Positions 354 to 64,000 of a stretch of 64,000 nt of DNA are shown in pieces. A program made the position numbers and the translations under genes. The DNA is from Euprymna scolopes. Taxonomy: Eukaryota. The notes under the pieces were generated by a model. The model did not search any database. It saw nothing but the letters and a program-made list of their open reading frames with translations, and had not been told where the DNA came from. The stretch lies in NCBI GenBank assembly GCA_053919585.1, contig CM132785.1; one strand, 5' to 3'. How positions within the stretch are numbered: the stretch's first letter is position 1; each line of letters starts with the position of its first letter.

Positions 354-536
354 CTCCGAATCCGCCTCCTAATTTGTTGAGCGCAATCCTGGCATCCCGA
401 AGATCAATAGCAACTTCTGGATATTGAGCTTTTCCGGCAATCTCAATAAGTTCTTCTAATTTTGGTTGGTCACTGTTCTTTATGGCTAATCGTAATTGTT
501 TACGCAGAGCGTCCGGTGACATGTCCACGGAAATAT
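354..536 (-). CDS. Exon class D (variant, 183 nt)
   Basis: DISVDMSPDALRKQL...GGGFG; tag acceptor, gttag donor. Confidence 0.85.
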
Positions 537-1947
537 CTACGTAAAATGACACAAATTATCTTACTAAACGGAAACGACATTTTATTACTTAATGTAAAGT
601 TACATGACACTTCTTATTTATGAAAACTTAATTTGAAAAATTAGATAGAAGCATTAAAATAGTGTGAATAATAAAATGATAAAATAGTCTTTTAAGCAAT
701 ATGAAATTAATGTATATATTATTAGTTCAATACATTTATTATCGTTTGCTCTTATAGCAATATTCTATTCATTAATAATCATGTTACTAGAATTATAATA
801 TAAAACGTTTGGTTCATTCTAAAATATTCAGAAAAAAACGTAAATATGTTGTTGTTTTCAAGATTAAAGTTAAAACCAAAATTAACCAATAATGAATGTT
901 TATAATGAAAACAATACATTCAGATAAGGTGTGTGAAAATGAAAGGTTCGAACCTGCATCGGCATGTTTCTTTTTGAAAAGACGGAAGCTAGGACGTTTC
1001 ACATGTAATCTTGGCAACGAGAATGATCCTGATAATTAAAATTAATTATAATCATGAGAATTTCAACCATGAAAAAACATGATTCAAACAAACAAATATT
1101 TATTCTGAAGCTGATCTAAAAGTGTTCCTTTTTTATTATTTATTTTTGAGCTAAAGACATAGCTTATCAAATTTATCTACATGCATATTGAGAATTATAA
1201 TTGATTCTTAGATAAAATGCTAATTTCATAAGCTTAATAAATTTACGCAAATAAATAGTTTTAATGAGAATTTATTCATGGGTTTATAATTATTAATGTA
1301 GAACATTATATAATAGTTATTCATTTAAATGTACGCGATGAATTATATTTTTCATTAACATTATAAACATGCTGTCGATAAATTTAAGGTAAATGTGATT
1401 TTATTTCAGAATAAAGTCAGATAATGTCAACATATATTCTTTAAAATGCATTAAGATGAGATCAAATTCGTCAAACCATGCAAAGAGAGAGAGAGAGAGA
1501 GGGGGGTAATGTCAAGCTGATCTGTTATATAGAGAATTTTAAAAAAGCCGAATGAATGGTAGGGCGTTAGGACAAACCTTTTCCACTTTCTTCCAAGGAT
1601 CCCAGATGAAGTCTGGCTTCTTGGATATCGGGCAAAAGTTCGGCGTGTCCAGAACTTACACATTCGGCTATTACTTTTCCTAGAATTTCTGGATCGTTTT
1701 TCTTCATGGCATTCTCTAGCTTCACGCGGAGTTTGTCTACGCTCAATTTTCCTGATAAGCAAAATGTACCATTGAAGAAAATAGTCAATCCTCTCCCCTC
1801 CAGTAAAAAATTGTTAATAAAAATATATACCAAAAATGTCAGTGCAGGGGATTGATGAAAAAAGGGTGCAAGAAAGATGAACTAAGAATCAGATTCCCAA
1901 ATTACAACATATAGACCATGCATTTTTAAAAAATTTCAGTGGAAAAA

Positions 1948-1991
<44 letters not shown>

Positions 1992-4179
1992 AATAATGAA
2001 AATAAAAAGTTAAATATTTATATCTTAATAGAAACTTTATATGAATCAAGATGACATGTATTATGCATAGTTATGATATATTGGATAATCATCGATTGTT
2101 AACACTCTTATTATTATTAATGTTTATTTCTAACTCAAAATAAAACCATCTTATACATTTAATCGAATTTGATTACAAACTGTTCTTAGTATTTTTTAAA
2201 TGATGTTTAAAGACGCTAAAGTCTCACATAAAATTATCTCCATTTTTTAAATTTCTTATATGGAAGATTCTTGTCAAATATTTTTACTTTTCCGACTGAC
2301 AATATGCAAAAATAAAGAGTGAAAGAGAGAAGATACAGTGCGAACACAAAAGAGTTTATACAAATGAAAATTTTAATCCTCTCAACTAACCTCCTCGGCC
2401 AAGACCCAATCCTTCCATAGTGTTTCTAGCCTGAGCAAGGTCAAAATAAAGTTCCGGAAAACCGGCTTCCTCACACTCAGTTATGGCCTTTTCCAATTCA
2501 ACTTTGTTCTTGTGTTTAATTGCTGCCCTTAGTTGTGCACGGAGGGCCTCTGGAGTTTTCAGTCCTGATTAAGGTAATTATTAATTATTAATTATAAATA
2601 TTATTAATTATGAATAACTATTAGTGATTATAATCTCAAGATTATTTATTAGAAAGCTTCTTTATAAATGTTAAGTAGAATGAACATTGACATTATTGTA
2701 TGGATTGAACATTATCTACGTAAATGTCAAGAATAATTAACACGCAATATGTAAACCAATAAAATAAACACATAAGTTTATGAAAAAACCGCATTAGAAT
2801 CCAATCTCATACTTAATCAACATGTTTTAATGTATAAAATACTTTGTATTTCACAATTTTTTCTTTAAAATCTGGCTTCTCTACACGCGATTTTAATAAC
2901 TGCAAGACATGTAGATATGTTATGGTAATAATTAAAATCGAGTGCCGAGAGGACATATTTTATAATAAATAAAATTATGACATTAAAACTGTTAAAAACT
3001 TTCCAAGTTTGCTAGAGAATATTTGTATTCTATTCTAATGCGTCTTATATACGTTATGTGTTGTTATTTTTCGTTTACCAGTTATCGAATATATACTATT
3101 CGATAATTTACATGTTATTTATTTTATATAATTGTAAGAAAAATAATGTTGATATATTCATGAATTATAATCCACAGTTAGCTTATTATAAAATAGTTTC
3201 ATATATTTCAAATGTATTTTCTAGTCATGTGTATATAATTATAAATCAAATTTACCACGATAATAAATATTAGATCATTTAATAACTTTAAATGTTAGAT
3301 AAATCATTTAAGTATTTCATGCTATTTTAATATATATGAATCAGTATTCCAACCTCCTTGTCCTCCTTCCAGTTTGAATAAGGCCTCTCTTGCTTGATGA
3401 ATGTCGACATCAAGGCCTGGAAGACCAGCGGATATACTTTCGGTAATGGCGGCATTCAAGTTCTTCTTGTCATTTGATTTAAACGCTGCCTTCAACCGTC
3501 CAAGAAGATTGTCCAGCGAGAGATTTCCTATTAATCGAAGTTCGACGGTATTAAAGAGTTTGAATAAGAAAAGAGAATTCAATTTCTAACTTTTACTTTT
3601 TCCAGATTAAATTACTACAAATTTTTAAAAAATGTAAAATTGTGAATTTATATAAAATTCTGTTGATAAATTAAAATTTAAATGTGATACAAATTATATT
3701 TTATTTAAAAACTGGAAAATATTTTTTTAAAATTATTTTTTATATATATTTTCATGTGAGAATCTAACCTCCAAATCCGCCTCCTAATTTGTTGAGAGTT
3801 TCCCGAGCTTCACGAAGATCAAACGCCAATTCTGGATATCGGGATTCTTCAGCAATTTCAATGAGTTGTTCTAATTTCGCTCGGTCTTTGTTCTTTATAG
3901 CTAATTGCAGTTGAGTACGCAGTTTCTCAGGTGACAAATCGCCAATGGATATATCTATATGCAATAACAACCATCAGGTTTTAAAAGAAAATATCAAAAA
4001 TAAAATAATTAATGGTATTTAACATAAGTAAAATGAAACTGCAAATTAATAGTTCTATTCAATACACCGATTTTATTTTATCTTATTTTACATGTTAATA
4101 TTATATTTAAGTCTTTACTATTAATCTTATATGTATATAAATGACCGATTATAAATTTATAATAAATAGCTTATAAATT

Positions 4180-4233
<54 letters not shown>

Positions 4234-4640
4234 TGCAAGTTTATAGTAATAATAACAATAATAAGTTAATAAGTGTATAATAATACCAATGCTCGATCTA
4301 CAACATATAATAAAAACGATGTATGCACGGAGTTACGATCATAAATTTAGAATTGTGATGAACCTTATCCTTTCGTAAAGGATTTTAACTACTTTCTGAA
4401 AAGAGATGTACAGTAAAATGTTTTTCGTTTACGATAATAAATCGCAAAGTAAAGATTCGCACCTGCATCTCCATGTTTTTTACCGAACAAACTGAATTTA
4501 GGAGCTTTGAAATGGAATTGTGGGAACGACCATGATCCTGATAATCAAAATAAAAAAAAATGTCAAACACCTTTACTATATTCGATAAAAAAAATTCTAT
4601 ATTGTATTTCAACATTTTCTACCTTGAGTAATAAAAGATT

Positions 4641-4709
<69 letters not shown>

Positions 4710-7700
4710 TTACTATTTAATTGTTGGTATTGATATGAAGGAAATGTATTTGTTTATCACGATTTGAAATTGAATGTTGATGAAAATATGTATTTTAAGT
4801 TAGCATATCTATAACATTAATGCGGTAAGTGATTATCAAAAGGGAAAATAAATCGATAAACTTTTATTAAAATAAGAATTTACAAAAATATATTTAATTT
4901 AGAATACATATCGTTTAAATGCAAGTTAAATATTCTTTGAAAGTTCAGTTTACGAATCGCGAACTCTATAAGAAATCAAACGAATCGGAACAAACCTCTG
5001 TCAGTCGCTTCCAGAGAATCCAGATGGATTCTCGCTGCTTGGATATCAGGTAAAAGTTCTGGATATCCAGAACTGACACATTCGGCGATTACTTTCTCTA
5101 AAAGTTCTGGGTCGTTTTTCTTGATGGCACCATCAAGTTTCAGCCGGAGTTTGTCGACATTCAATTTTCCTAATAAACAAACCCAATTTCAAAGATGAAA
5201 CATATAAATCTAATATTGCTAGGATGTAAAATTAGTTATAAGTATATCTAAGTGAAGAATAATGTCAATTTACGTAAAAAAAAATTTTTAAACCGCACGA
5301 GATATTCTCTTTAATTTATTTTTATGAATACGTTGACAATATATTAGATGAGAGAATTCATATGTATTGATTGTATTCAAAATATTTTTACTGACGAGCA
5401 CTAAAAGAATCTAAACAATTGAGGTTTGATAAAGAAAAAGTGTTAATTTGTAAACTTGATAATAATAGTATAAGCTATACTTTAACATTTTTATTGCATT
5501 AATATTATTACAAAATATTTTACAACCTGATTTCCATATGATATAAATATATTAGTTCAAATATCTTAGTGTGTATTTTCGCTGAAGGACGCTAGTCGTA
5601 AAATATTTAATATAGATTTTATTTGTTTAAATATTCTGTTTGTGAGAGAATTAAAAATATAGAAATAGATAAAGAATAGAGAAAGTGATAAATAGTATTT
5701 CATCTACTAACCTCCACGACCAAATCCCAAACCATCCAATGTATCTCTGGCCAGACGGAGATCCAGAGCAAGTTCCGGATAACCGACTTCCTCACATTCT
5801 ATGATAGCTTGTTCCAGTGCTAGTTTGTCTTTATTTTTAATTGCTGCCTTCAGATCAGCGCGGAGAGCCTCTGGAGTCTTCAATGCTGATTGACGGAATT
5901 AGTGATGAGAAATATCTTGTTAAAGTATTAATTAAAACTACATATTTGTGAATATTTACTAGAAATTTTTACTAAGATGAATTTAATGTAATGCGTGCCA
6001 TTGTATGAAAATCAGCCATTTATTAATACTATCTAGAATGCTATTGAACAGTATATATAATATATTACAAATGAAGCTAAATGTTTGGTTTTACAAATAA
6101 TATTTCTAAACAAACGATTATTTTATTCGCGAATCTGAATATTAGCGTAGAATACCACAAAGTGATATAGCATCAATAAAAATGCAGCTTCATATGCAAT
6201 ACACTATATATTGTCAGAAATATTTTTAATATTAAGATAATATATACCAACAGCATATATAGATTTGGCCCATTTAAAAGTAGCCCAATTACAAGTCGAA
6301 TGAAAGATTGTTATTGAGAATTAAGCAGCGGAATTATGATTTTCATTGTGTACTTGATACTTGTGCAGTTTATGAGCCGTGTTATCTTTAGATTAGATTA
6401 TCAAATTAGAATTCCATTTTTACGGTATTTTTTGCTTATTAGTTTGTTAATTGAATGCATAGAATAGTTAAATAACCTCCTTAACAACAGCTTTCTAAAT
6501 AATAACGTTATTACTTCAGCACAGTCTGTAAATTGCGCAAGTACCGTGTATTTTGTGTGGATATTTGTATTCTTGTTCCACGAAAGAAGAAAACTTAATA
6601 TAGATTGGAGAGCAGTGTATCCATAATATAATAAACAAACTATCAAGGTTTAGAAATTGGGCTGCTTTTAATTGGATACCAAGATTTCATATTCAAATTT
6701 AAATGCTGTCATTTTTCATGTACATACGTATTTCTTAAAATCTCTTTCAATGTACAAAAAACATATTTTATCATTTATCATAACCTGATTCATTGTTTAC
6801 ATATAATTATAGAATTTTTAAAATCCCATTAAAATATGTTATATTAAAATGTATATTAATCACTGATCTAACCTCCTTTGCCGCCTTCTATTTGGAATAA
6901 GGAATCTCTTGCTTGTTGGATTTCAACATCTAGACCAGGAATACCAGCCGATATGCTTTCATTAATGGCTACATCGAGGGCTTTCTTGTCTTTTGATTTA
7001 AACGCTGCCTTAAGCCGCTCACGAAGCCATTCCAAAGAAAGGTTTCCTGACGATTGAACATCGATTTAGAAAAAACATTAAAATGCATTGAATTTATGTC
7101 ACTTACATAAAAAAACGAAGTTGTTATATTTTTGACATAATCGCATTATAATTAATTACATAAGAAGAAGATGTTTCATATTGACAGAATAATCGTTACA
7201 ATTAAACAATATAATTCAAAGTTTATAATACATGCATATGTAGATTTTTATATGTATATATACATACAAAAACATTTGAATCATTATATATAATTTTAAA
7301 ATACAGTACTGTTTATTTTTCCACCATTAATATAATATACATAAATATTCGTAATATGTATACCTCCAAATCCGCCTCCCATTTTGTTTAGTGCTATGCG
7401 GGCATCACGGAGATCAAAAGCCAGCTCTGGATATTTGGCTTCTTCTGCAAGCTCAATAAGTTGTTCCAATTTGTGCTTATCTTTAGCCTCTATAGCTAAT
7501 CGGAGCTGCTCACGGAGAGTATCCGGTGATAAGTCATCCAGAGAAATATCTAAGTAAAATGATAGTTCATTGTCAGGTATTTATATCACAGTTTAAAATT
7601 ATAACATCTTAATATTTGATTTCATTTTAAAATCATTATATTATTATAACATTATGTACTTTTTAAAAATTTATTATTTCATTGCGTAAATATGACGAAA

Positions 7701-10700: not shown

Positions 10701-12521
10701 CAATTTGAATAATAGCTCTCTGGCTTGTTGTATTTCGAGATCCAGACCAGGAATACCGGCCGATAAACTTTCATTAATGGCGGCTTCGAGAACCTTCTTG
10801 TCATTTGATTTGAGCGCTGCCTTTAGCTTTCCACGCAGTCCTTCCAGAGTAATATTTCCTGATAATCAAATTGAATAAAGTAGGTAAATGTCATAATTTA
10901 AATTTTATCATGCAAATTGCATAGTTGCTATTTAGTAAATATTTAATGTAACGCCATTTAAGAAACACAAAAGTGTTGAATTATATATTTTAAAAATATA
11001 AGTTTTTTAAAATTATCTAACCTCCGAATCCACCGCCATTATTGTTGAGTGCTTCACGGGCGTCGCGGAGATCAAATGCCAATTCTGGATAATTGGCTTC
11101 TTCGGCAATCTCAATGAATTGTTCTAGTTTGGGTCGGTCATTGTTCTTGATGGCTAAGCGAAGTTGTTCACGGAGTGTGTCCGGTGTGATATCATCCAGA
11201 GAAATATCTAAGTAAAATAGGTAAAATGTATTTGCCTTTGTGGACTAAGAAGAACGTTCAGTACTAAAGGGTCTCATTTTGAAAGAAATGGGCTACTTAT
11301 TTATGAATATCAAACCGAATATTTATTGAAATTGTCTGACATGAATTTCACGTCATTATACGTCATTACTGGTATAGTTATAAAACAATTCTATAGATAT
11401 CTCATTACATTATTTGAAATTACTTTGACTATAGCTAATATAAATGTACATTTAATTCTAACTTTACATGATTAGTAATGTTTTTCATATAATTACCATT
11501 ATTTTAATTATTTAATCTTTAACCCGTTTAATCATTCCATATTAATTATATAGAGTAAAGAGAAAAATTATTTTGAACAGCGTGACAATTTAAAAAATAA
11601 TATTAATAATGTTTATAAAAAAACTAAAAGGCCGAACCTGTGTCTCCATATTTCTTACGGAACAGACTGAATTTGGGAAGTTTCATTTGGAATTGTGGAA
11701 ACGACCATGATCCTGACAATCAAAATGCATTTAAATTTTTAAAATACTTTAACCGGTAAATCGAACATCAAATTTGCGTTTATTTTTGGTTTACATGATT
11801 TTTTTTACTAAAGATATATATAATCATAATGTTTAATACAGATTTTTATTTTTCTATCGGATGAATCCACTTTATAAAGTACACAATTTTATGAATATTT
11901 ATATTAGATATCATGAAAAATTACAATATGAATATTTTTATCGAGGTATCGTTTGTAATTATTATACGGAGATGGTTGTGTTCAATTCAAGACAAACAAA
12001 TACTTTATAAATTTTAATAAAGTAAACGATCATTTTTAAATTAAAATAGTATGCACATAAAAACTATTACATAAGAACATTCTACATTTCCTATAAGAAT
12101 CAAGAAGTACAGACCTCTGTCACTTCCTTCCAGAGATTCAAGATGTAATCTGGCCTCTTCGATATCGGGCAAAAGTTCCGGATGTCCAGAACTGACACAT
12201 GCTCCGATCACTTTAGCCAAAAGGTCTGGGTCATCTTTCTTCATAGCGCCTTTGAGTTTCAAGCGAAGGTCGTCTACGCTCAATTTTCCTGACAAACAAA
12301 ATGTATCTATAATAATATATTTAACTTTATATCTCACTATTAGAAAAAGGTATCCCACAAAGAGACTGGTAACAAAAGCTAAAATTTAATCACCGCGAAG
12401 AATTTTGTATTAAATACTTGAAAATCCTAAACAAAAAAAGAAAAATGCTAAAAGTATAATACATAATACTATGAAGTTGCTATTCAATTTTCAATTTAGC
12501 CAGACTTAATGAATTGAATTA

Positions 12522-12575
<54 letters not shown>

Positions 12576-14495: not shown

Positions 14496-14562
<67 letters not shown>

Positions 14563-20500: not shown

Positions 20501-20623
20501 CAATTATATGGATAAATTTACAATAATAGACAATACAGTACAAAATTGTAGATATTGTCTTTTAATGATGGTTTTAGTTATAAAATTTTAACATTCTGAT
20601 GAAATTATTTTATTAATATTTAA

Positions 20624-20701
<78 letters not shown>

Positions 20702-28687: not shown

Positions 28688-28745
<58 letters not shown>

Positions 28746-35016: not shown

Positions 35017-35067
<51 letters not shown>

Positions 35068-35648: not shown

Positions 35649-35717
<69 letters not shown>

Positions 35718-39250: not shown

Positions 39251-39326
<76 letters not shown>

Positions 39327-43018: not shown

Positions 43019-43050
<32 letters not shown>

Positions 43051-58000: not shown

Positions 58001-61000
58001 TAAGATCTAATTAATATAATTAATAATTATGTTTTGATAGTAATAATATAATATAATGTTATTATTTATACTTATTTGGGTAATTTTAAACTATTGTAGA
58101 ATGAAATTTAAATTTGTGAATAGTTACTTTGTATTGGAAAGCAGCATGAATTATAATAAAGGAAAAATTATCACATAAAATGCAAAATGACTTTGAAGCT
58201 TAAATTTACCTTGATAATTAATTTTAATATTATTTTTTTATTTACATTCATATATAGATCACCCTTAATAAAATAATTCTATTGTTATAACATGGAGGTG
58301 GGGAAATATACACATTTTACAAATTAAATATAAATTAAAAATTATATATATATATATATAATTATTTTGTTATGTTACTGTTATTAGAGATTAATATAAT
58401 GTTAATGGCTAAGGAGAGATTCATATTCAAAAGTGTATTCTAACCTCCTTTTCCGCCTTCCAGTTTGAATAAGGCAACTCTCGACTTGTGAATATCAGCA
58501 TCGAGTCCAGGAAGACCGAGACTGATGCTGTCTCTAATGGTTGCATCCAAAAGTTTCTTATCTTTTGCTTTCAATGCTGCTTTGTGCTGTTCACGTAAGT
58601 CGTCGATGGAAATATCTCCTAATAATTGAAAGTTAATTTATTTGAAAAACATAATATTCAATATATTTAAATTCATTAATTTTCGTGTTTGTTTATAATA
58701 AAATACTAATTAACATGATTTAAGAAATGTGGTTATATTGTCTTTGAATAATATTCTTTAACAAATCTAAATGATTTCTTCAAAGTTTTACTATAAATGA
58801 TACGGATTATTTACTGTACAAAATAGTTCTAAACTTTTACTATTTATAACAGATAATCATTTTTTAATCGAACCTCCATATCCGCCACTCAATTTGAAGA
58901 GTGCTTCCCGGGCCTCACAAAGATCGAACGCCAGTTCTGGATACTTGGCTTCCTCAGCAATGTCAATAAGTTGTTCTAATTTGAGTCGATCATTGTTCTT
59001 CACAGCTAATCGCAGTTGGTCACGCAATGTTTCTGGTGTCAAATCGTCCAGGGAAATGTCTGTATGAAATCAGATTCCAATAGTCAGAAATATATTTCAC
59101 TTTTTTATGATAAAGATAATGTAAAAGTTTTTATTTTTATTGTAATGATGTATTGACTTTCTTGATTATTAATGAATTGTTTTATATTGCGTTTATAAAA
59201 GCATTTATATTAGAATTATTTATTTTTCTATATTTAGCATTGCTAATGTAGCAATACGTTGTAATGCACCGATTTAAAGTATATATGAAATTATATTTTA
59301 TTTTTAAGACTCAAACATTCACAGAATTTATAATTTAAAAAATAACATAAAAATGCAAGCATTTTTTCAGCTAGGAAAAAATGTGTAAGGGACTTATACG
59401 TCCGAATATTAACACTAAATTTATTTATTAACACTTTATAAGAAATGCGCCATGTAAGGATGATGCTGTATTTCAGTATAAAATATTCAGATACTCAGAT
59501 TCAATGATAGCCTTAATGCTTGTTTTAAATCAAATCATCAATAAACTGATGCGAACCTGTTTCTCCATATTTCTTACGGAACAAGCTGAACTTTGGCAGT
59601 TTCATTTCGAATTTTGGAAACGACCATGATCCTGATAAGTGAAATGCAATATTATACAATATTAGAATTAATTTGACAGGAAATGATATAATTTTATAAT
59701 GAATTGCTTTTACTGATACTTCAGTGTGCACCAACTAGAAATACTTATATTTTATTAATAGTAAATAAGAATTTGAGAGTATATATTATAATGAAGGAAT
59801 TTTACCCATTATATAAGGTCGATTATTGCATAAATTAAGTTAAATTTTTTAGGTTAACTAAACAATATAATAATTGTTAAATGATGTTTATAAATGTGTA
59901 CATGTAATTAAAGCAAAATACGTCCAAGTAATTTAAAACTTTATAGAATATAATCTTTAAATGAAATTAGTGGGTGCAAACACTATATGATATACTTATC
60001 TAACCTTCAACATCCGCTTCCATTTTTGGAAGGGCTTCACGGGCCTCTTTCAGATCAAGTTCAAGTTCTGGATATTGGGCTTTCTCAGCCTCCAAGATAA
60101 GCTTCTCAAGTGCGGGCCTATCATTGTTCTTCATAGCTAACCGCATTTGGGCACGTAGGTCTTCGGGGGACATCAATTCGATTGTAACATCTATATAAAA
60201 TTATTACGTTTTTGTAGTTTTTTTATTAGAAACAATAATATAAATAAGCATTTTTTTTAATGTTTTATACATAATATTGCAATTCATCTACAAATTTAAA
60301 TCTCCCAAATCTAATAAAAATAAGCATTTAACTGTGATTTAATTTGATTTAAATTTGGAAATAATCGCTTGAGATTTAATTTTAAACGCATGCTCTATTA
60401 TAGCACAGTTTTAATGGAAATAATTTATAGTGTTATCTAGTAAAAGTTAGTTATTACCGTTTATATAATGAGAATGGCTTTTTTATTTGCAAATTTATAT
60501 ACCAACATTACGTAACGATATTTACAGAAAGTTCAATATATGTTCATAATATGATAGCGAAATCATTAAATATCTTATATTTTTCGTTCAATAATCGTTA
60601 CAGTTATAATTCATAAATAAGAAACTAAAAAATAGCGAACCTTTACCTTTTTTCTTCTTAGAGAAGAGTCCAAAGCTGGGCATTTTGATATTAATGTCTG
60701 GGAACGACAAAGATCCTGATGACCAAAATTAAATATGTTTTAATGAATTCAGAATAAATTTCGATATATTACAATCATTTTTAAACCACTCATTACCTTG
60801 AGTCAGAGTTATTTTTAATAAGAGAATTAATCATGTTTCATAATGTACTGAATGAAACTTATGATAAAATATGTATTTTACTCAGTTTAAAATTTTACAA
60901 ACGTAAGTTTTAGTCGATCAAAATTTGATAAATATTTTTCTATTAAAAATCTAATCAGAATTCGGAATATTACTGAATAAATTACACTTTAATGCAAATC

Positions 61001-64000
61001 AGAATGAAAACGTTTTTTTTTTCAGTTATTATAAGCAAATTATCGAGACGAACCTTTACCGCTTGCTTCCAAAGCATCCAGATGAAGTCTGGCTTCTTGG
61101 ATGTTTGGCATGAGTTCTGGATGTCCGTAACTGACACATTCATCAATTACTTTGGCCAAAAATTCTGGATCGTCTTTCTTGATTGCACCCTTTAGTTTCA
61201 GTTTAAGGTCATCTACACTCAATTTTCCTGACAAACAAATGATACCAATGGCAACGACATTAACACTTTCAACATGAAGTAGATTTAAGGCAGATTTTAG
61301 TATTGTAAAAATGTGAATTACCTACAGATATAATTAAATAAATTTAAATGTTATATTTAAAAACAAGTCCAAGGTCTTTACGGAGAAAACGAAATTTTTA
61401 TCGATTTATTTCTTACTAAGAACAGAAATTTAAAATGATGAATATTAAGATACATCAATAAACATTTCTGATAGTATTACGTTCATGTTTGAATATGTAT
61501 TTGATTAGAAGTATATACATTTATTTTATTTGTTTTATCATAAACTAGCATCAGTATGTTCACAGTAATAACGATGCACTGTAACACATAATGTTATAAC
61601 TGTGTCAGAGGTTTTAGCAGAGCATTTAGGAAAACCAAGATTAGGATACTGCGAGGGAGATTTAAGAACTAATAAATACAAACTGATACATTTATCAACT
61701 TCGAAGATACTAACCTCCACGACCAAAGCCCATACCGTCTAGTGTGTCTCGTGCCAAATTGAGATCGAGAGCAAGTTCCGGAAATCCAGCTTCCTCGCAT
61801 TCAATGATAGCCTTTTCCAATTGAAGCTTGTCTTTGTTTTTGATTGCTGCCCTCAGTTTGCCACGAAGAAAGTCCGGTGTTTTAAGATCTGATTAACGTA
61901 ATTAATTAACAATTATGATCTGACAGAAGTAATATAATATGCGATTGTTTTTACACTCATTTCAGAGATGCTAAATTATTTTATAACTATAGTTTCCATT
62001 CATAGATATTTTATTTGTATTAAAGAATAATAAACAACATCTATCAGAATATTTTATATCATAAGATGCAAGTCTGATACAAGTATGTTTCATATATTAT
62101 ATACATTTATATAAGTGTTTACATTCGAATATAGCAATTATTTATGATTTTACATGAACAACTCTTAATAAATGAATTAATAGATATAAAGAAATTTTAC
62201 TGCATTTAAACTCTATGATACATTTATTATTGTTGGGAAATATAGATATATCTTATATGATGTTAATGTTCTAAAATATTTATTTTATTTATTTACAATA
62301 TCTGCATTTATTAAAGAGATTTGTATTCAAATGTATATTCTAACCTCCTTTTCCGCCTTCCAGTTTGAATAAGGCAACTCTCGACTTGTGGATATCAGCA
62401 TCGAGTCCAGGAAGACCGAGACTGATGCTGTCTTTAATGGTCGCATCCAAAAGTTTCTTATCTTTTGCTTTCAATGCCGCTTTATGCCGTTTACGTAGAT
62501 CGTCCACGGAAATTTCTCCTAATAATTGAAAGTCGATTTATATGAAAATATAAAATTTTATATTTCGGATTTTTTAATAATTGTGTTTAAAATACAATGT
62601 TTGCATAGTTACATATGAATTAAAATACTTTCTTATGTTTTTCTTATCGATGATATATCAGATAATAATAATAATAATCAACAATTATAAGTAAAACATT
62701 AAAATATGAATATTAATATAACGAATTATTATCCATAAAGAGTTTCTTATTAGTTGGATTTTTACAATAAATAATCATCTTTTTAATCTGACCTCCATAT
62801 CCGCCACTCAATTTGAAGAGTGCTTCCCGGGCATCACAGACATCGAATGCCAGTTCTGGATACTTGGCTTCCTCAGCAATATCAATAAGTTGTTCTAATT
62901 TTGGTCGATCTTTGTTCTTCACAGCTAATCGCAGTTGGTCACGCAATATTTCTGGTGTCAAATCGTCCAAGGATATATCTATTCAAATTCAGATTACAAT
63001 AGTCAGCAAAATATTTCATATCGCTATGATAAAAATAATACGAATTATTGTATTGTTATTTATTGCATTATAATAATCTTTCTTCTCTTGTAATTATTGT
63101 ATCGGTCAGTTTATATATTTGTACATATCTTAAACTTGAAATTTATCCGTGTAGATTTGCATATATTTATCAATATGCTTTTATTAAGCATTCTACCCTA
63201 TACATAGATTTATGGTGAAATCAGAATAGAAAACAAATTTATGATTCTATGAATATGATGAAAACAATTAATCATTTGGAAATAGAATCAGTAATGAAAA
63301 TAATTGTATATGTATAAATATATCCATGTATATAAAAATAAAGAAGGTAGGAAATACGTAATGAATCATGCTGGCAATTATATTGCATTTAGTATTTAAT
63401 ATTTAAAATATAGTTTCTTTTAAAAAATATTAATATACTAAAATCGTGATTCGAACCTGTATCTCCATGTTTCTTACGGAACAGACTGAACTTTGGAAGC
63501 TTCATTTCAAATTGTGGAAACGACCATGATCCTGATAATCAAAACGGCAATAATAATCTCCTATAATTTTGTATAACTATATAAGAAAATAATGAAATGA
63601 TTATTTTTACAGTTAATCAATTACTGATGGGTTCCATTTTTTTTAATTTCGTAAATTGTAATCAACATGATATCAATGATTATTTAAATTACCTTGCCTT
63701 TCTGAGGTAAACAAATACGATATGATGATCATTAAAATAGGGTTTATATATTTACCCATTTAATTAAAATGTTATAATTAAAATTAATTTAAAAGTCTGT
63801 TTGTTATAGAATATATTATTTACATAAAATGAAAGGGTGCAGATGCAATATGATATACTTATCTAACCTTCAACATCTGCTTCCATTTTTGGAAGTGCTT
63901 CACGGGCCTCTTTCAGATCTACTTCAAGTTCTGGATATTGGGCTTCCTCGGCTTCCAAGATAAGCTTCTCAAGTGCAGGTCTATCGTTGTTCTTCATAGC
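354..64000 (-). CDS. Interior of a giant tandem-exon repeat gene (98 exons, ~14.9 kb coding); start and end lie outside the window
   Basis: Homologous GC-richer blocks in AT-rich DNA, each bounded by AG..GT on the minus strand, all phase 1-1, with class-invariant lengths of 75/174/186 nt (E 165-168, one D 183). No in-frame stops in the exons I translated or that appear in the ORF track. Family assignment (hillarin/KY-like tail) is recollection only. Confidence 0.88.
954..1028 (-). CDS. Exon class S* (75 nt)
   Basis: GSFSLPRLHVKRPSFRLFKKKHADA; gttcg donor. Confidence 0.82.
1578..1751 (-). CDS. Exon class A (174 nt)
   Basis: GKLSVDKLRVKLENAMKKNDPE...EESGK; gtttg donor. Confidence 0.87.
1949..1983. 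repeat. (TAA)n microsatellite
   Basis: Direct read. Confidence 0.9.
2391..2564 (-). CDS. Exon class B (174 nt)
   Basis: GLKTPEALRAQLRAAIKHKNKVELEKAITECEEAGFPEL...GLGRG; gttag donor. Confidence 0.87.
3354..3527 (-). CDS. Exon class C (174 nt)
   Basis: GNLSLDNLLGRLKAAFKS...LEGGQG; gttgg donor. Confidence 0.87.
3769..3954 (-). CDS. Exon class D (186 nt)
   Basis: DISIGDLSPEKLRTQL...GGGFG; gttag donor. Confidence 0.87.
4181..4229. repeat. (ATA)n microsatellite
   Basis: Direct read. Confidence 0.9.
4463..4537 (-). CDS. Exon class S (75 nt)
   Basis: GSWSFPQFHFKAPKFSLFGKKHGDA; gtgcg donor. Confidence 0.85.
4643..4706. repeat. (AT)n microsatellite
   Basis: Direct read. Confidence 0.95.
4996..5169 (-). 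CDS. Exon class A
   Basis: 174 nt, AG/GT, phase 1-1, class homology. Confidence 0.87.
5712..5885 (-). CDS. Exon class B
   Basis: 174 nt, gttag donor. Confidence 0.87.
6261..6687. mobile_element. Tc1/mariner-like MITE relic
   Basis: Inverted ends CCCATTTAAAAGTAGCCCAATT (6269-6290) and AATTGGGCTGCTTTTAATTGGA (6655-6676) in an enlarged intron. Confidence 0.6.
6873..7046 (-). CDS. Exon class C
   Basis: 174 nt, gttag donor. Confidence 0.87.
7364..7549 (-). CDS. Exon class D
   Basis: 186 nt, gtata donor. Confidence 0.86.
7991..8065 (-). CDS. Exon class S
   Basis: 75 nt, ASWSLPRFNLKAPKFSFFR; gttcg donor. Confidence 0.84.
8422..8751. other. Assembly gaps (8422-8568, 8614-8751)
   Basis: N runs. 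Confidence 1.
8824..8997 (-). CDS. Exon class A
   Basis: 174 nt, gtggg donor. Confidence 0.84.
10164..10337 (-). CDS. Exon class B
   Basis: 174 nt, gttag donor. Confidence 0.87.
10685..10858 (-). CDS. Exon class C
   Basis: 174 nt, gttag donor. Confidence 0.87.
11022..11207 (-). CDS. Exon class D
   Basis: 186 nt, gttag donor. Confidence 0.87.
11638..11712 (-). CDS. Exon class S
   Basis: 75 nt, gttcg donor. Confidence 0.85.
12115..12288 (-). CDS. Exon class A
   Basis: 174 nt, gtctg donor. Confidence 0.87.
12525..12573. repeat. (TA)n microsatellite
   Basis: Direct read. Confidence 0.95.
12983..13156 (-). CDS. Exon class B
   Basis: 174 nt, gttag donor. Confidence 0.87.
13574..13747 (-). 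CDS. Exon class C
   Basis: 174 nt, gttag donor. Confidence 0.87.
14496..14560. repeat. (AT)n(GT)n compound microsatellite
   Basis: Direct read. Confidence 0.95.
14678..14863 (-). CDS. Exon class D
   Basis: 186 nt, gttag donor. Confidence 0.87.
15560..15634 (-). CDS. Exon class S
   Basis: 75 nt, GSWSFPSFHFKAPKFSLFRKKHGDT; gtttg donor. Confidence 0.85.
16153..16326 (-). CDS. Exon class A
   Basis: 174 nt, gttcg donor. Confidence 0.87.
16868..17035 (-). CDS. Exon class E (Pro/acidic derivative of C, 168 nt)
   Basis: GSITPEITTPELSLKTKDTKSLDAF...DAPDAGKG; gttcg donor. Confidence 0.8.
17306..17491 (-). CDS. Exon class F (D-derived, 186 nt)
   Basis: EISVPTMSPEELRKQL...YPELELDLKMAREALPKLGVDFE; gttag donor. 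Confidence 0.85.
18005..18079 (-). CDS. Exon class S*
   Basis: 75 nt, GSFSLPRFQMKVPKFGMFRKKQGNA. Confidence 0.84.
18493..18666 (-). CDS. Exon class A
   Basis: 174 nt, gtgtg donor. Confidence 0.86.
19105..19182 (-). pseudogene. Decayed partial copy of a class B exon
   Basis: Plus-strand CTCTGATCAAACGGATATACAGAGAGCTTTAGGATAATCGAGTTGCTGACGTTTAATGAT aligns by eye to the B core with an indel; no splice sites. Confidence 0.5.
19256..19429 (-). CDS. Exon class B
   Basis: 174 nt, gttag donor. Confidence 0.87.
20093..20266 (-). CDS. Exon class C
   Basis: 174 nt, gttag donor. Confidence 0.87.
20626..20700. repeat. (AT)n microsatellite
   Basis: Direct read. Confidence 0.95.
20771..20956 (-). CDS. 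Exon class D
   Basis: 186 nt, gttag donor. Confidence 0.87.
21387..21461 (-). CDS. Exon class S
   Basis: 75 nt, gttcg donor. Confidence 0.85.
21896..22069 (-). CDS. Exon class A
   Basis: 174 nt, gtttg donor. Confidence 0.87.
22403..22816. mobile_element. Helitron/Helentron-like non-autonomous relic with internal GA-rich tract
   Basis: CCGGCATTGCCCGA (22411-22424) is an imperfect inverse of TCGGGCAACATCGG (22791-22804), followed by GTAACTTGCTAG; purine tract at ~22585-22730. Confidence 0.4.
22930..23103 (-). CDS. Exon class B
   Basis: 174 nt, gttag donor. Confidence 0.87.
23554..23727 (-). CDS. Exon class C
   Basis: 174 nt, gttag donor. Confidence 0.87.
24021..24206 (-). CDS. Exon class D
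   Basis: 186 nt, gttag donor. Confidence 0.87.
24736..24810 (-). CDS. Exon class S
   Basis: 75 nt, gttag donor. Confidence 0.85.
25321..25494 (-). CDS. Exon class A
   Basis: 174 nt, gtttg donor. Confidence 0.87.
25976..26149 (-). CDS. Exon class B
   Basis: 174 nt, gtcag donor. Confidence 0.87.
26570..26743 (-). CDS. Exon class C
   Basis: 174 nt, gttag donor. Confidence 0.87.
26985..27170 (-). CDS. Exon class D
   Basis: 186 nt, gttag donor. Confidence 0.87.
27703..27777 (-). CDS. Exon class S
   Basis: 75 nt, gttcg donor. Confidence 0.85.
28167..28340 (-). CDS. Exon class A
   Basis: 174 nt, gtctg donor. Confidence 0.85.
28690..28741. repeat. (TA)n microsatellite
   Basis: Direct read. 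Confidence 0.95.
29259..29407. other. Assembly gap
   Basis: N run. Confidence 1.
29484..29648 (-). CDS. Exon class E (165 nt)
   Basis: ARVSPEIDLPDVSVETKDTNTLGIF...LDEPDVGK; gttag donor. Confidence 0.8.
29901..30086 (-). CDS. Exon class F/D-variant (186 nt)
   Basis: DITLVDMSPEALREQL...YPEAELELRDAKDALAKLRGEFK; gttag donor. Confidence 0.85.
30301..30839 (+). mobile_element. Non-autonomous mariner deletion derivative
   Basis: Imperfect ~30-bp TIRs (TA-TCAAGTCGGTGCAAAGAATTTTGCTGGTTT / reverse complement TA-TCAGGATGGTGCAAAGAGTTTTGCAGATTT) flanked by TA; internal transposase relics HDNAR (~30490) and SDYYLFRGLKNQLGGFRF (~30582). Confidence 0.85.
31015..31089 (-). CDS. Exon class S*
   Basis: 75 nt, GSFTFPGFHMKVPKFSMFGKKHGSA. 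Confidence 0.84.
31455..31628 (-). CDS. Exon class A
   Basis: 174 nt, gtttg donor. Confidence 0.87.
32151..32324 (-). CDS. Exon class B
   Basis: 174 nt, gttag donor. Confidence 0.87.
33608..33781 (-). CDS. Exon class C
   Basis: 174 nt, gttag donor. Confidence 0.87.
34061..34246 (-). CDS. Exon class D
   Basis: 186 nt, gttag donor. Confidence 0.87.
34762..34836 (-). CDS. Exon class S
   Basis: 75 nt, gttag donor. Confidence 0.85.
35019..35064. repeat. (AT)n microsatellite
   Basis: Direct read. Confidence 0.95.
35293..35466 (-). CDS. Exon class A
   Basis: 174 nt, gtttg donor. Confidence 0.87.
35652..35714. repeat. (TA)n microsatellite
   Basis: Direct read. Confidence 0.95.
36633..36806 (-). 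CDS. Exon class B
   Basis: 174 nt, gtcag donor. Confidence 0.87.
37104..37277 (-). CDS. Exon class C (divergent)
   Basis: 174 nt, open frame, gttag donor. Confidence 0.82.
37565..37750 (-). CDS. Exon class D
   Basis: 186 nt, gttag donor. Confidence 0.87.
38285..38359 (-). CDS. Exon class S
   Basis: 75 nt, gtttg donor. Confidence 0.85.
38700..38885 (-). CDS. Exon class F
   Basis: 186 nt, DVTIELMSPEDLRGQL...LPKMKADVE; gttag donor. Confidence 0.86.
39251..39324. repeat. (TA)n microsatellite
   Basis: Direct read, one G interruption. Confidence 0.95.
39449..39727. other. Assembly gap
   Basis: N run. Confidence 1.
40582..40656 (-). CDS. Exon class S*
   Basis: 75 nt, GSLSFPDINIKMPSFGLFSKKKKDK. 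Confidence 0.85.
40945..41118 (-). CDS. Exon class A
   Basis: 174 nt, gtttg donor. Confidence 0.87.
41621..41794 (-). CDS. Exon class B
   Basis: 174 nt, gttcg donor. Confidence 0.87.
42248..42421 (-). CDS. Exon class C
   Basis: 174 nt, gttag donor. Confidence 0.87.
42690..42875 (-). CDS. Exon class D
   Basis: 186 nt, gttag donor. Confidence 0.87.
43408..43482 (-). CDS. Exon class S
   Basis: 75 nt, gttcg donor. Confidence 0.85.
43821..44006 (-). CDS. Exon class F
   Basis: 186 nt, gttag donor. Confidence 0.87.
44594..44668 (-). CDS. Exon class S*
   Basis: 75 nt, gttcg donor. Confidence 0.85.
45009..45182 (-). CDS. Exon class A
   Basis: 174 nt, gtttg donor. Confidence 0.87.
45637..45810 (-). 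CDS. Exon class B
   Basis: 174 nt, gttag donor. Confidence 0.87.
46256..46429 (-). CDS. Exon class C
   Basis: 174 nt, gttag donor. Confidence 0.87.
46653..46838 (-). CDS. Exon class D
   Basis: 186 nt, gttat donor. Confidence 0.86.
47119..47407 (-). mobile_element. 5S rRNA-derived SINE-like insertion (SINE3-type)
   Basis: Minus strand begins GGCATAATCACGTTGAGACACCTGTTCTTGCTGTATTACCGAAGTTAAGCAACGTTGAACGTGGTCAGTACTAAATGGATGACC, a degraded 5S rRNA, followed by ~180 nt of unrelated GC-richer body; absent from paralogous introns. Confidence 0.75.
47600..47674 (-). CDS. Exon class S
   Basis: 75 nt, gttcg donor. Confidence 0.85.
48030..48215 (-). CDS. Exon class F
   Basis: 186 nt, gttag donor. 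Confidence 0.87.
48808..48882 (-). CDS. Exon class S*
   Basis: 75 nt, gttcg donor. Confidence 0.85.
49244..49417 (-). CDS. Exon class A
   Basis: 174 nt, gtttg donor. Confidence 0.87.
49923..50096 (-). CDS. Exon class B
   Basis: 174 nt, gttag donor. Confidence 0.87.
50541..50714 (-). CDS. Exon class C
   Basis: 174 nt, gttag donor. Confidence 0.87.
50949..51134 (-). CDS. Exon class D
   Basis: 186 nt, gttag donor. Confidence 0.87.
51653..51727 (-). CDS. Exon class S
   Basis: 75 nt, gttcg donor. Confidence 0.85.
52088..52273 (-). CDS. Exon class F
   Basis: 186 nt, gttag donor. Confidence 0.87.
52887..52961 (-). CDS. Exon class S*
   Basis: 75 nt, gttag donor. Confidence 0.85.
53278..53451 (-). 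CDS. Exon class A
   Basis: 174 nt, gtttg donor. Confidence 0.87.
53855..54028 (-). CDS. Exon class B
   Basis: 174 nt, gttag donor. Confidence 0.87.
54492..54665 (-). CDS. Exon class C
   Basis: 174 nt, gttag donor. Confidence 0.87.
54937..55122 (-). CDS. Exon class D
   Basis: 186 nt, gttag donor. Confidence 0.87.
55228..55355. other. Assembly gap
   Basis: N run. Confidence 1.
55719..55793 (-). CDS. Exon class S
   Basis: 75 nt, gttag donor. Confidence 0.85.
56187..56372 (-). CDS. Exon class F
   Basis: 186 nt, gttag donor. Confidence 0.87.
56781..56855 (-). CDS. Exon class S*
   Basis: 75 nt, GSMSFPDINIKMPSFGLFSKKKKDK. Confidence 0.85.
57202..57375 (-). CDS. Exon class A
   Basis: 174 nt, gttcg donor. 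Confidence 0.87.
57833..58006 (-). CDS. Exon class B
   Basis: 174 nt, gttag donor. Confidence 0.87.
58445..58618 (-). CDS. Exon class C
   Basis: 174 nt, gttag donor. Confidence 0.87.
58874..59059 (-). CDS. Exon class D
   Basis: 186 nt, gttcg donor. Confidence 0.87.
59557..59631 (-). CDS. Exon class S
   Basis: 75 nt, GSWSFPKFEMKLPKFSLFRKKYGET. Confidence 0.85.
60005..60190 (-). CDS. Exon class F
   Basis: 186 nt, gttag donor. Confidence 0.87.
60641..60715 (-). CDS. Exon class S*
   Basis: 75 nt, gttcg donor. Confidence 0.85.
61054..61227 (-). CDS. Exon class A
   Basis: 174 nt, gttcg donor. Confidence 0.87.
61715..61888 (-). CDS. Exon class B
   Basis: 174 nt, gttag donor. Confidence 0.87.
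62345..62518 (-). CDS. Exon class C
   Basis: 174 nt, gttag donor. Confidence 0.87.
62793..62978 (-). CDS. Exon class D
   Basis: 186 nt, gtcag donor. Confidence 0.87.
63457..63531 (-). CDS. Exon class S
   Basis: 75 nt, gttcg donor. Confidence 0.85.
63868..64000 (-). CDS. Exon class F, truncated by window edge
   Basis: AMKNNDRPALEKLILEAEEAQYPELEVDLKEAREALPKMEADVE; gttag donor. Confidence 0.85.

What the first reader, a model, noticed from the sequence alone, without database searches (positions are those of the whole stretch)
354..64000. Array of 98 symmetric phase-1 exons: a giant modular protein or a combinatorial splicing system
Seen: 17 A, 15 B, 15 C, 16 D, 9 F, 2 E and 24 S/S* exons, every one phase 1-1. 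Lengths are fixed per class and I saw no frameshifted member, while most intron sequence is unalignable, which suggests purifying selection on each copy. A/B/C/D/F are paralogues of one ~58-62 aa helical module (LRxxLxxAxKxxDxxxLxxxIxxxxxxGxPELxxDxxxARxxLxxLxGGxG). Inference: any exon can join any other in frame, so the locus could make a nebulin/titin-style chain (at least ~4,970 aa, 72 helical modules in this window), many length or composition isoforms by skipping, or Dscam-like choices. I know of no described gene with this module amplified like this. Sequence alone cannot separate these models.
Basis: partly seen in the sequence, partly recalled or inferred. Interest (0 to 1): 0.92.

Follow-up and report, generated by a model that had tools for sequence, protein, structure and literature searches.

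The report
Giant three-helix-module gene array, KY-like
The window is an internal 64-kb stretch of one very large protein-coding gene on the minus strand. It is built from 98 in-frame exons that each encode a small three-helix bundle or a short basic spacer. The bundle is the same module found in the tail of octopus kyphoscoliosis-peptidase-like (KY-like) proteins, so this is a real and unusual expansion of an existing, uncharacterised gene family rather than a new kind of system.

Summary
**Observation:** confirmed almost to the letter. The minus strand carries 97 complete exons plus 1 cut exon. All are phase 1-1 with AG/GT borders and class-fixed lengths, and none has a stop codon. They form 5-exon (S-A-B-C-D) or 7-exon (S-A-B-C-D-T-F) super-repeats. 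All five N gaps lie in introns, and the exon cycle continues across them.

**Selection:** the copies are under purifying selection. In the six youngest units pN is 0.04, pS is 0.25 and intron divergence is 0.28. No decayed relic was found.

**Module:** a confident three-helix bundle followed by a glycine-rich linker. It has no Pfam model and no PDB relative.

**Family:** the module is homologous to the 10 to 25 or more modules in octopod KY-like proteins (transglutaminase-like core plus Ig-like_KY). Gene models of 5,242 and 6,596 aa span the homologous Octopus loci. A giant chain is therefore the favoured reading, probably as part of a KY-like gene.

**Splicing models:**
- Dscam-like mutually exclusive choice is disfavoured.
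- Regulated exon skipping stays open and is hinted at in two ways. Array donors carry T at +3 in 88 of 97 exons. Octopus gene models differ in which modules they include.

The source species was not identified.

The parts
63868..64000 (-). 3' part of an F-class module exon, cut by the window end. It is the most 5' coding piece of the gene in the window.
   Evidence: Open frame ...AMKNNDRPALEKLILEAEEAQYPELEVDLKEAREALPKMEADVE, with a donor at 63868.
60005..63531 (-). Unit 1, 7-exon super-repeat (348 aa): S 63457-63531; A 62793-62978; B 62345-62518; C 61715-61888; D 61054-61227; T 60641-60715; F 60005-60190
56187..59631 (-). Unit 2 (348 aa): S 59557-59631; A 58874-59059; B 58445-58618; C 57833-58006; D 57202-57375; T 56781-56855; F 56187-56372
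52088..55793 (-). Unit 3 (348 aa): S 55719-55793; A 54937-55122; B 54492-54665; C 53855-54028; D 53278-53451; T 52887-52961; F 52088-52273. The N gap 55228-55355 lies in the S-to-A intron.
48030..51727 (-). Unit 4 (348 aa): S 51653-51727; A 50949-51134; B 50541-50714; C 49923-50096; D 49244-49417; T 48808-48882; F 48030-48215
43821..47674 (-). Unit 5 (348 aa): S 47600-47674; A 46653-46838; B 46256-46429; C 45637-45810; D 45009-45182; T 44594-44668; F 43821-44006. The S-to-A intron is enlarged by a 5S-rRNA-like insert.
38700..43482 (-). Unit 6 (348 aa): S 43408-43482; A 42690-42875; B 42248-42421; C 41621-41794; D 40945-41118; T 40582-40656; F 38700-38885. The N gap 39449-39727 lies in the 1,696-nt T-to-F intron.
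35293..38359 (-). Unit 7, 5-exon super-repeat (261 aa): S 38285-38359; A 37565-37750; B 37104-37277; C 36633-36806; D 35293-35466
31455..34836 (-). Unit 8 (261 aa): S 34762-34836; A 34061-34246; B 33608-33781; C 32151-32324; D 31455-31628
28167..31089 (-). Unit 9, variant S-F-E-D (200 aa): S 31015-31089; F 29901-30086; E 29484-29648; D 28167-28340. The N gap 29259-29407 lies in the E-to-D intron.
25321..27777 (-). Unit 10 (261 aa): S 27703-27777; A 26985-27170; B 26570-26743; C 25976-26149; D 25321-25494
21896..24810 (-). Unit 11 (261 aa): S 24736-24810; A 24021-24206; B 23554-23727; C 22930-23103; D 21896-22069
18493..21461 (-). Unit 12 (261 aa): S 21387-21461; A 20771-20956; B 20093-20266; C 19256-19429; D 18493-18666
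16153..18079 (-). Unit 13, variant S-F-E-D (201 aa): S 18005-18079; F 17306-17491; E 16868-17035; D 16153-16326
12115..15634 (-). Unit 14 (261 aa): S 15560-15634; A 14678-14863; B 13574-13747; C 12983-13156; D 12115-12288
8824..11712 (-). Unit 15 (261 aa): S 11638-11712; A 11022-11207; B 10685-10858; C 10164-10337; D 8824-8997
4996..8065 (-). Unit 16 (261 aa): S 7991-8065; A 7364-7549; B 6873-7046; C 5712-5885; D 4996-5169. The N gaps 8422-8568 and 8614-8751 lie in the intron between D of unit 15 and this S.
1578..4537 (-). Unit 17 (261 aa): S 4463-4537; A 3769-3954; B 3354-3527; C 2391-2564; D 1578-1751
354..1028 (-). Start of unit 18: S 954-1028; A 354-536 (183 nt). The array runs on past the low end of the window.

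Best explanation
**What it is.** The window is an internal segment of one very large protein-coding gene on the minus strand of a cephalopod-like genome. The species was not identified.

**What the exons encode.** Each 174/186-nt exon encodes one ~50-residue three-helix bundle plus a glycine-rich linker (GGxGG). Each 75-nt S or T exon encodes a short basic, aromatic-rich spacer (SWSFPKFxMKLPKFSLFRKK..). Because every exon is phase 1-1, splicing neighbours together gives a continuous chain of about 4,970 residues from this window alone. That chain holds 72 bundles, 2 degenerate bundles and 24 spacers, arranged as 261-aa and 348-aa super-repeats.

**How it grew (inferred).** The array grew by tandem duplication of whole units, and every copy has since been kept by purifying selection.

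**Homology (shown).** The bundle is homologous to the C-terminal modules of octopod KY-like proteins, which have a transglutaminase-like core and Ig-like_KY domains.

**Gene membership (inferred).** The array is most likely an expansion of the A/F-B-C-D-type exon unit that sits inside that gene in Octopus. It would then be part of, or derived from, a giant KY-like gene.

**Function (inferred, no direct evidence here).** The product would be a long beads-on-a-string scaffold or spring, tethered by the KY head to the cytoskeleton.
For: **Exon anatomy and frame**
- Anatomy, phases and splice sites.
- Gaps are all intronic.

**Selection**
- Within-class median dN/dS is 0.14-0.24.
- In the six young units pN is 0.03-0.05, pS is 0.23-0.29 and intron p-distance is 0.27-0.31.
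- There are no decayed module or spacer relics outside the 98 exons.

**Fold**
- Single module: pLDDT 84, with helices at 8-20, 24-37 and 40-56 and a disordered Gly-rich tail.
- Two-module model: pLDDT 82 but pTM 0.47, so the bundles are independent.

**Homology**
- A profile built from the window's modules finds Octopus proteins as its best hits.
- It matches 16 modules of the O. vulgaris KY-like protein P0156 at 1e-11 to 1e-22 each, and 10 modules of P0164.
- Octopus KY module exons are also 174 nt and phase 1-1.

**Link to the KY-like gene**
- In O. sinensis and O. bimaculoides an F-B-C-D-like unit lies between KY modules 11 and 12, inside called genes of 6,596 aa (with Ig-like_KY) and 5,242 aa.
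- In a module tree, window classes A/F, C and D have those Octopus unit exons as outgroups.

**Conservation in other genomes**
- The same S-A-B(-C-D) order, with introns, occurs in contigs from other genomes (L001, L003-L005, L009).
- In L002, B and C are fused into one 348-nt exon with the class-C donor. This is a precise intron loss that implies adjacent B-C joining.
Against: - No transglutaminase or Ig-like_KY exon lies in the window, and both ends of the array run off it. Linkage to a KY head in this genome is therefore not shown.
- The annotated octopod KY-like proteins I could read (P0156, P0161, P0164) contain no S or T spacer and no window-like A-D series.
- I could not retrieve the 5,242- and 6,596-aa models to see whether they contain such arrays.
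- No giant array protein appeared in the representative search, though clustering under shorter representatives may hide it.
- There is no RNA or peptide evidence for this locus.
- The tree rests on ~57 residues per module, with no support values examined.
Confidence: 0.7

Rival explanations
1. Regulated cassette system. The array exons are mostly optional, and tissue- or stage-specific skipping of symmetric exons or whole units yields many length and composition isoforms of the same protein. This is compatible with the best explanation but makes isoform diversity the main point.
For: - All exons are phase 1-1, so any skip stays in frame.
- Array donors are AG|GTTNG. Position +3 is T in 88 of 97 exons and a purine in only 4. 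The same holds in arrays of other species (L001, L003, L009) and in the Octopus unit exons that annotated mRNAs skip.
- Octopus exons that are present in annotated proteins have GTAAG, GTGAG or GTAAA donors: 8 of 8 have a purine at +3, against 2 of 6 in the skipped exons (Fisher p = 0.015).
- Octopod gene models contain different subsets of module exons, always in frame: P0156 has 16, P0161 about 25 and P0164 10.
- NCBI models a separate short gene (P0001/P0151) on the unit that the long models skip.
Against: - No transcript data are available here.
- Differences between gene models may be annotation artefacts, and the models come from different species.
- Strong purifying selection on all 98 copies, with no relics, argues that each exon is used, but it does not say how often.
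- The +3 T may simply be inherited from the ancestral unit. No control set of ordinary introns from the window's own genome is available.
Confidence: 0.35
2. Stand-alone gene. In this species the S-A-B-C-D array is its own gene, derived by duplication from KY-like module exons, and is not spliced to a transglutaminase-like head.
For: - The S and T spacers are absent from the KY-like proteins I could read.
- No KY head lies in 64 kb of window, or in 30 kb of the related contig (L001 and L009).
- NCBI annotates module-only proteins (P0001, P0151, P0161).
Against: - In Octopus the homologous unit lies inside the span of the giant KY-like gene, on the same strand.
- In L009/L001 the array grades upstream into more divergent A-B-C-D units without any visible gene boundary.
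Confidence: 0.25
3. Dscam-like mutually exclusive choice. One exon per class is picked from many alternatives to give a short, combinatorially variable protein.
For: Class members have identical length and phase.
Against: - The classes are interleaved in fixed S-A-B-C-D order rather than clustered by class.
- In the older units intron conservation falls to background within 20-30 nt of the acceptors and 10-20 nt of the donors. No docking or selector-type conserved intronic elements are seen in ungapped register.
- A relative fused adjacent B and C into one exon.
- Homologous loci carry 5-6.6 thousand aa gene models.
Confidence: 0.04
4. Non-functional repeat or assembly artefact. On this reading the exon-like blocks are a decaying satellite or falsely duplicated assembly copies.
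For: The tandem array contains five N gaps, so copy number is uncertain.
Against: - The copies differ by 23-54% at synonymous sites, yet 98 of 98 keep frame, length and splice sites. pN/pS is about 0.15 and no relics were found.
- The same exon classes are conserved in other genomes.
Confidence: 0.02

Closest known systems
Octopod kyphoscoliosis-peptidase-like (KY-like) proteins. Examples: O. vulgaris CAI9725887.1 (P0156, 2,069 aa), O. bimaculoides XP_014780069.1 (P0161), the protein named 'LOC115214248 isoform X1 [Argonauta hians]' (P0164), and the 5,242-aa and 6,596-aa gene models on O. bimaculoides CM046607.1 and O. sinensis CM016865.1.
   Same: - The same ~58-aa three-helix module with a GGxGG linker, at per-module E-values of 1e-11 to 1e-22.
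- The same gene anatomy: one module per 174-nt phase 1-1 exon.
- An A/F-B-C-D-like exon unit lies inside the Octopus gene.
- Very large predicted products.
   Different: - The window has 5- and 7-exon super-repeats, amplified at least 17 times.
- It has 75-nt basic spacer exons (S, T) and two degenerate E exons. None of these occurs in the KY-like proteins I could read.
- No transglutaminase or Ig-like_KY exon is in the window.
- The family is uncharacterised, there is no Pfam model for the module, and I found no paper on it.
Nebulin and titin (giant modular muscle proteins). This comparison comes from general knowledge and is an analogy only.
   Same: - Tandem small modules organised in super-repeats.
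- Modules coincide with symmetric exons, so the array can grow by unit duplication and be shortened in frame by skipping.
   Different: - The folds and sequences are unrelated: there was no Pfam hit of any kind.
- The modules here are three-helix bundles joined by flexible Gly linkers. They are not nebulin SDxxYK repeats or Ig/FN3 domains.
Vertebrate KY (kyphoscoliosis peptidase)
   Same: The octopod relatives share the transglutaminase-like core and the Ig-like_KY domain. Vertebrate KY is a skeletal-muscle protein tied to filamin C and Z-disc maintenance (PMC6078408), which motivates the scaffold hypothesis.
   Different: Among the mollusc KY-like proteins retrieved, the gastropod, bivalve and flatworm ones have no such modules; only the octopod ones do. 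Nothing in the window itself is KY head sequence.
AHNAK-type repeats. This is a resemblance recalled from memory and was not tested.
   Same: The S and T spacers (..SFPKFxMKLPKFSLF.., ..INIKMPSFGLF..) and the E exons (..PGVDVDMPEAKL.FDAPD..) recall the PKF/MPKF and P-x-V-D-V motifs of AHNAK's central repeats.
   Different: No sequence comparison was run, and the spacers gave no Pfam hit. The resemblance may be convergent low-complexity similarity.
Spectrin-type and other tandem three-helix-bundle arrays
   Same: Tandem three-helix bundles forming a long chain.
   Different: The bundles are about 50 aa rather than 106 aa, and they are separated by glycine linkers rather than continuous helices. 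There was no Pfam or PDB sequence hit, and no Foldseek hit at E <= 0.001.

Membership tests
Octopod KY-like giant protein gene | Tandem ~58-aa helical modules homologous to those C-terminal of the KY head | tested here: met
   The window-derived profile A1 matches 16 modules of P0156 (E 1e-11 to 1e-22) and 10 modules of P0164. The best database hits are Octopus proteins.
Octopod KY-like giant protein gene | One module per symmetric (phase 1-1) 174-nt exon | tested here: met
   This holds for window exons and for Octopus KY module exons in L006 and L008.
Octopod KY-like giant protein gene | Transglutaminase-like core (PF01841) and Ig-like_KY (PF23265) encoded in the same gene | tested here: inconclusive
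   No such exon lies in the 64-kb window, and both ends of the array run off it. In Octopus the head lies more than 150 kb upstream of module 11, so absence from the window says little.
Octopod KY-like giant protein gene | Array exons spliced to KY head or tail exons in mRNA | not testable with these tools
   No transcript data are available. The 5,242- and 6,596-aa models could not be retrieved, because the length limits of the protein search exclude them.
Nebulin/titin-type giant proteins | Nebulin repeats or Ig/FN3 domains | tested here: not met
   No Pfam family was matched by any exon class or by the 44 aligned modules. The resemblance is architectural only.
Dscam-type mutually exclusive exon clusters | Alternatives of one class clustered side by side | tested here: not met
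   The classes are strictly interleaved as S-A-B-C-D(-T-F).
Dscam-type mutually exclusive exon clusters | Conserved intronic docking or selector elements | tested here: not met
   In the older units, identity falls to background (0.30) beyond about 20-30 nt upstream and 10-20 nt downstream of exons. This was an ungapped comparison, so short shifted elements could be missed.
AHNAK-like repeat proteins | Sequence homology of the spacer and E exons to AHNAK central repeat units | not tested
   The resemblance is from memory only, and no AHNAK sequence was compared.
Spectrin repeat | Match to a 106-aa spectrin repeat profile or fold | tested here: not met
   There was no Pfam hit and no PDB sequence hit. 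Foldseek found nothing at E <= 0.001.

The most novel reading that the evidence does not exclude
The array is a lineage-specific length-tuning device. It would consist of about 100 optional three-helix 'beads' and basic spacers inside a KY-like gene. Their uniformly weakened donors (pyrimidine at +3, conserved across species while the rest of the intron decays) would let tissues dial the length of a cytoskeletal tether or spring. That would make it a cephalopod analogue of titin or nebulin isoform tuning, built from an undescribed fold family.
Probability: 0.25. Interest if true: 0.75.

Novelty: new variant of a known kind. Interest (0 to 1): 0.55.

Why it matters
If transcribed as inferred, this would be one of the largest invertebrate proteins outside the titin family. 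It is built from a three-helix module that has no Pfam model, no solved relative and no literature. It is attached to a protein family (KY) whose vertebrate member is a poorly understood myopathy gene.

The locus is also a clean natural example of growth by duplication of symmetric exon units, with every copy kept under selection.

Its near-universal GTT donors offer a directly testable link between 5' splice-site strength and the use of repeat exons.

For annotation, it flags a locus that gene finders fragment or skip.

Tried and rejected
- **Pfam.** All exon classes and 44 aligned modules gave only sub-threshold noise. The precomputed PF24398 tag on P0161 is a chance sub-threshold hit.
- **Structure databases.** The PDB sequence search found only designed helical proteins at E > 0.01. 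Foldseek of the module model against PDB found nothing significant.
- **Identifying the source genome.** Exact look-ups of 12 window ORFs all failed. Megablast and blastn against the Octopus loci gave only ~70% exon matches and no shared interspersed repeats. The species is therefore left open.
- **Retrieving Octopus gene models.** Look-up of P0156's locus failed. The 5,242- and 6,596-aa models could not be fetched, because protein-search candidates are limited to 1.75 times the query length. I judged a search seeded from a protist myosin too weak to justify.
- **Literature.** KY-like with cephalopod or octopus, and AHNAK with cephalopod, returned only incidental proteome or expression-list mentions. 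Searching the run accessions found nothing.
- **tRNA scan.** No tRNA gene was found.
- **Pseudo-exon relics.** None were found.
- **Protist hits.** Dinoflagellate proteins and Rhodelphis and other myosins score only about 10-28 bits per repeat. I treat these as distant or convergent helical repeats, not as evidence of orthology.

Full report
**1. What is there**

The window is AT-rich (GC 0.22-0.30 per 2 kb). On the minus strand it carries a strictly periodic series of short open blocks.

I enumerated every AG...GT interval that is open in phase 1. Filtering by class motif and length gave 97 complete exons plus one exon cut by the window end.

| Class | Count | Length (nt) |
|---|---|---|
| A | 16 | 186 (one of 183) |
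| B | 15 | 174 |
| C | 15 | 174 |
| D | 17 | 174 |
| F | 9 (one partial) | 186 |
| E | 2 | 165 and 168 |
| S | 18 | 75 |

Every exon ends ..G|GT and starts after AG, so all are phase 1-1. Every junction codon begins with G, so no stop can arise at a junction.

In gene direction the order is: (F), six S-A-B-C-D-T-F units, two S-A-B-C-D units, S-F-E-D, three S-A-B-C-D units, S-F-E-D, four S-A-B-C-D units, then S-A.

The complete exons sum to 14,772 nt, or 4,924 codons. Exon GC is 0.437 against 0.228 for introns.

**2. The assembly gaps**

All five N runs fall in introns:
- D to S, 8422-8568 and 8614-8751.
- E to D, 29259-29407.
- T to F, 39449-39727.
- S to A, 55228-55355.

The exons on either side are the ones the cycle predicts. 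Because all exons are symmetric, frame cannot be broken by a gap.

What cannot be known is whether a unit was collapsed at a gap, or whether a 75-nt exon is hidden in one. The exon count is a lower bound.

**3. Selection**

- Within classes, pairwise Nei-Gojobori estimates give pS of 0.28-0.54 and median dN/dS of 0.05-0.24.
- The six 7-exon units at 38-64 kb are the youngest, and only their introns still align. Across them pN is 0.03-0.05, pS is 0.23-0.29 and intron p-distance is 0.27-0.31. Synonymous sites therefore drift like introns, while replacement sites are held about seven-fold lower.
- A sensitive scan of all non-exon open stretches with the module profile and the spacer profile found no decayed copy.
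- This rules out a dead repeat or an assembly duplication. It shows that each copy has been useful as protein.

**4. The module**

- The five helical classes align without gaps over 57 columns. The nearly invariant positions are R12, A18, L27, I31, P40, L42, R50 and L53.
- AlphaFold2 on that alignment gives a confident three-helix bundle: pLDDT 84, pTM 0.67, helices at 8-20, 24-37 and 40-56, and a disordered Gly-rich tail.
- A natural two-module protein, modelled with a 23-row alignment, keeps both bundles (pLDDT 82). Its pTM is only 0.47, so their mutual orientation is undetermined and the chain behaves as beads on a string.
- Pfam, PDB sequence search and Foldseek give nothing specific.
- S and T spacers carry a net charge of about +4. 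A and F modules carry about -4 to -5.
- The two E exons align with class B, but their helices 1 and 3 are replaced by Pro/Asp/Glu-rich stretches.

**5. Relatives**

*Database hits.* A profile search of 1.84 billion representatives found 219 hits.
- The best are Octopus bimaculoides LOC128248363 and its O. sinensis counterpart. An 'O. bimaculoides kyphoscoliosis peptidase-like, partial' protein also appears, and its 90% cluster includes a 2,069-aa O. vulgaris protein.
- That O. vulgaris protein has a transglutaminase core, three Ig-like_KY domains, and 16 modules matching the window profile at 1e-11 to 1e-22 each.
- Further searches returned O. bimaculoides LOC106876157, with about 25 modules and the same C-terminal tail. 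They also returned a 1,720-aa protein with a KY head and 10 modules.
- Gastropod, bivalve and flatworm KY-like proteins have no such modules.

*Genomic context in Octopus.*
- In O. sinensis and O. bimaculoides the KY modules are single 174-nt phase 1-1 exons.
- Between modules 11 and 12 lies an F-B-C-D-like exon unit that the long protein models skip.
- The loci are spanned by called genes of 6,596 aa (with Ig-like_KY) and 5,242 aa.
- The KY head lies more than 150 kb upstream on the same strand.
- In a tree of all modules, window classes A/F, C and D nest with arrays from other genomes, and the Octopus unit exons are their outgroups.

*Other genomes.*
- Contigs of unidentified origin (L001, L009, L003-L005) carry the same S-A-B-C-D order with introns.
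- In L002, B and C form one 348-nt exon (174 + 174) with the class-C donor. This is a precise intron loss, which implies that B was spliced to the adjacent C.

**6. Splicing signals**

- Array donors are AG|GTTNG. Position +3 is T in 88 of 97 exons and a purine in 4, and +5 is G in 95.
- The same pyrimidine occurs in arrays of other species and in the Octopus exons that annotated mRNAs skip.
- Octopus exons that are present in annotated proteins (modules 1 and 11-14, plus three head introns) have GTAAG, GTGAG or GTAAA donors. That is 8 of 8 purines against 2 of 6 (Fisher p = 0.015).
- In classes A, B, C and F the GTTAG donor also places an in-frame TAG directly after the exon.
- Intron conservation in the older units is confined to about 20-30 nt before acceptors and 10-20 nt after donors.
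- I read this as a hint that array exons are regulated cassettes. It is not proof.

**7. Interpretation**

*Shown:*
- The exons are real, selected and symmetric.
- The module is a three-helix bundle.
- It is homologous to octopod KY-like modules.
- The gene anatomy is shared with those genes.
- The unit order is conserved in other genomes.

*Inferred:*
- Neighbouring exons are joined into a chain of about 5,000 aa or more.
- The array belongs to, or derives from, a giant KY-like gene.
- The product acts as a flexible scaffold or spring.

*Disfavoured:* Dscam-like choice, and a dead repeat.

*Open:* the extent of exon skipping, and the source species. Exact look-ups of window ORFs all failed.

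**8. Novelty**

The kind is known in two senses. It is a giant modular protein built from symmetric exons, and the module-bearing KY-like family already has very large gene models in public Octopus annotations.

What appears undescribed:
- The 5- and 7-exon super-repeat with basic spacer exons.
- The scale of the amplification.
- The module fold family itself, which has no Pfam model and no literature.
- The uniform GTT donors.

I rate it a new variant of a known kind, of moderate interest.

Noticed in passing
window 47297-47413 (-), inside a GC-rich insert of roughly 260-290 nt at about 47130-47415: A 5S-rRNA-like element (Rfam RF00001, 41.6 bits, full model length) sits in the S-to-A intron of unit 5. 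It makes that intron about 250 nt longer than its paralogues. It looks like the head of a 5S-derived SINE rather than a 5S gene.
   Followed up: partly
all 97 donor sites in the window, for example 352-353, 2389-2390 and 62791-62792 (minus strand): Donors are AG|GTTNG, with T at +3 in 88 of 97 exons and a purine in only 4. This pyrimidine is conserved across classes and across species, although the rest of each intron has diverged. In Octopus it marks the exons that annotated mRNAs skip.
   Followed up: partly
window, donors of classes A, B, C and F: GTTAG places an in-frame TAG immediately after the exon, in 12 of 16 A, 14 of 15 B, 12 of 15 C and 8 of 8 F exons. Retention of any of these introns would terminate translation one codon past the module.
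   Followed up: no
L002:253-600 (+) (Logan contig SRR24189495_80248): A single 348-nt phase 1-1 exon equals a B module plus a C module, with the intron precisely removed and the class-C GTTAGT donor kept.
   Followed up: partly
window 16868-17035 and 29484-29648 (-): The two E exons are class-B derivatives. Their first and third helices are replaced by Pro/Glu/Asp-rich stretches (..PEITTPELSL.., ..PGVDVDMPEAKLTFDAPD..). Together with the S and T spacers they recall AHNAK-type motifs, but this is from memory and was not tested.
   Followed up: no
L006 and L008 (O. bimaculoides CM046607.1, about 38.70-38.72 Mb; O. sinensis CM016865.1, about 71.29-71.32 Mb): NCBI models a small separate gene (LOC128248363 / LOC118764272, 192 and 313 aa) on the F-B-C-D-like unit. 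That unit lies inside the span of the 5,242- and 6,596-aa gene, and the small gene's first residues come from intron sequence.
   Followed up: partly
proteins P0156, P0161, P0164: Octopod KY-like gene models share the head, the first modules and the tail, but contain 16, about 25 and 10 modules, joined in frame in different combinations.
   Followed up: partly
proteins P0015, P0026, P0037, P0041, P0132 and others: Dinoflagellate proteins and protist myosins (Rhodelphis; one with MyTH4-FERM) contain 7-20 weak matches (10-28 bits) to the module profile, at a ~45-50 aa period. This may be distant homology or convergence.
   Followed up: no
window 38886-40581, 35467-36632, 32325-33607, 30087-31014, 8998-10163: Several introns are two to three times longer than their paralogues (928-1,696 nt against about 300-550 nt). 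No module or spacer relic was found in them, and their content was not examined further.
   Followed up: no
window 1921-1985, 4640-4700, 20640-20700, 28700-28760, 39200-39330 and elsewhere: There are many (TA)n, (ATA)n and (TATG)-type microsatellites in introns, and a (GA)n run at about 1487-1500.
   Followed up: no
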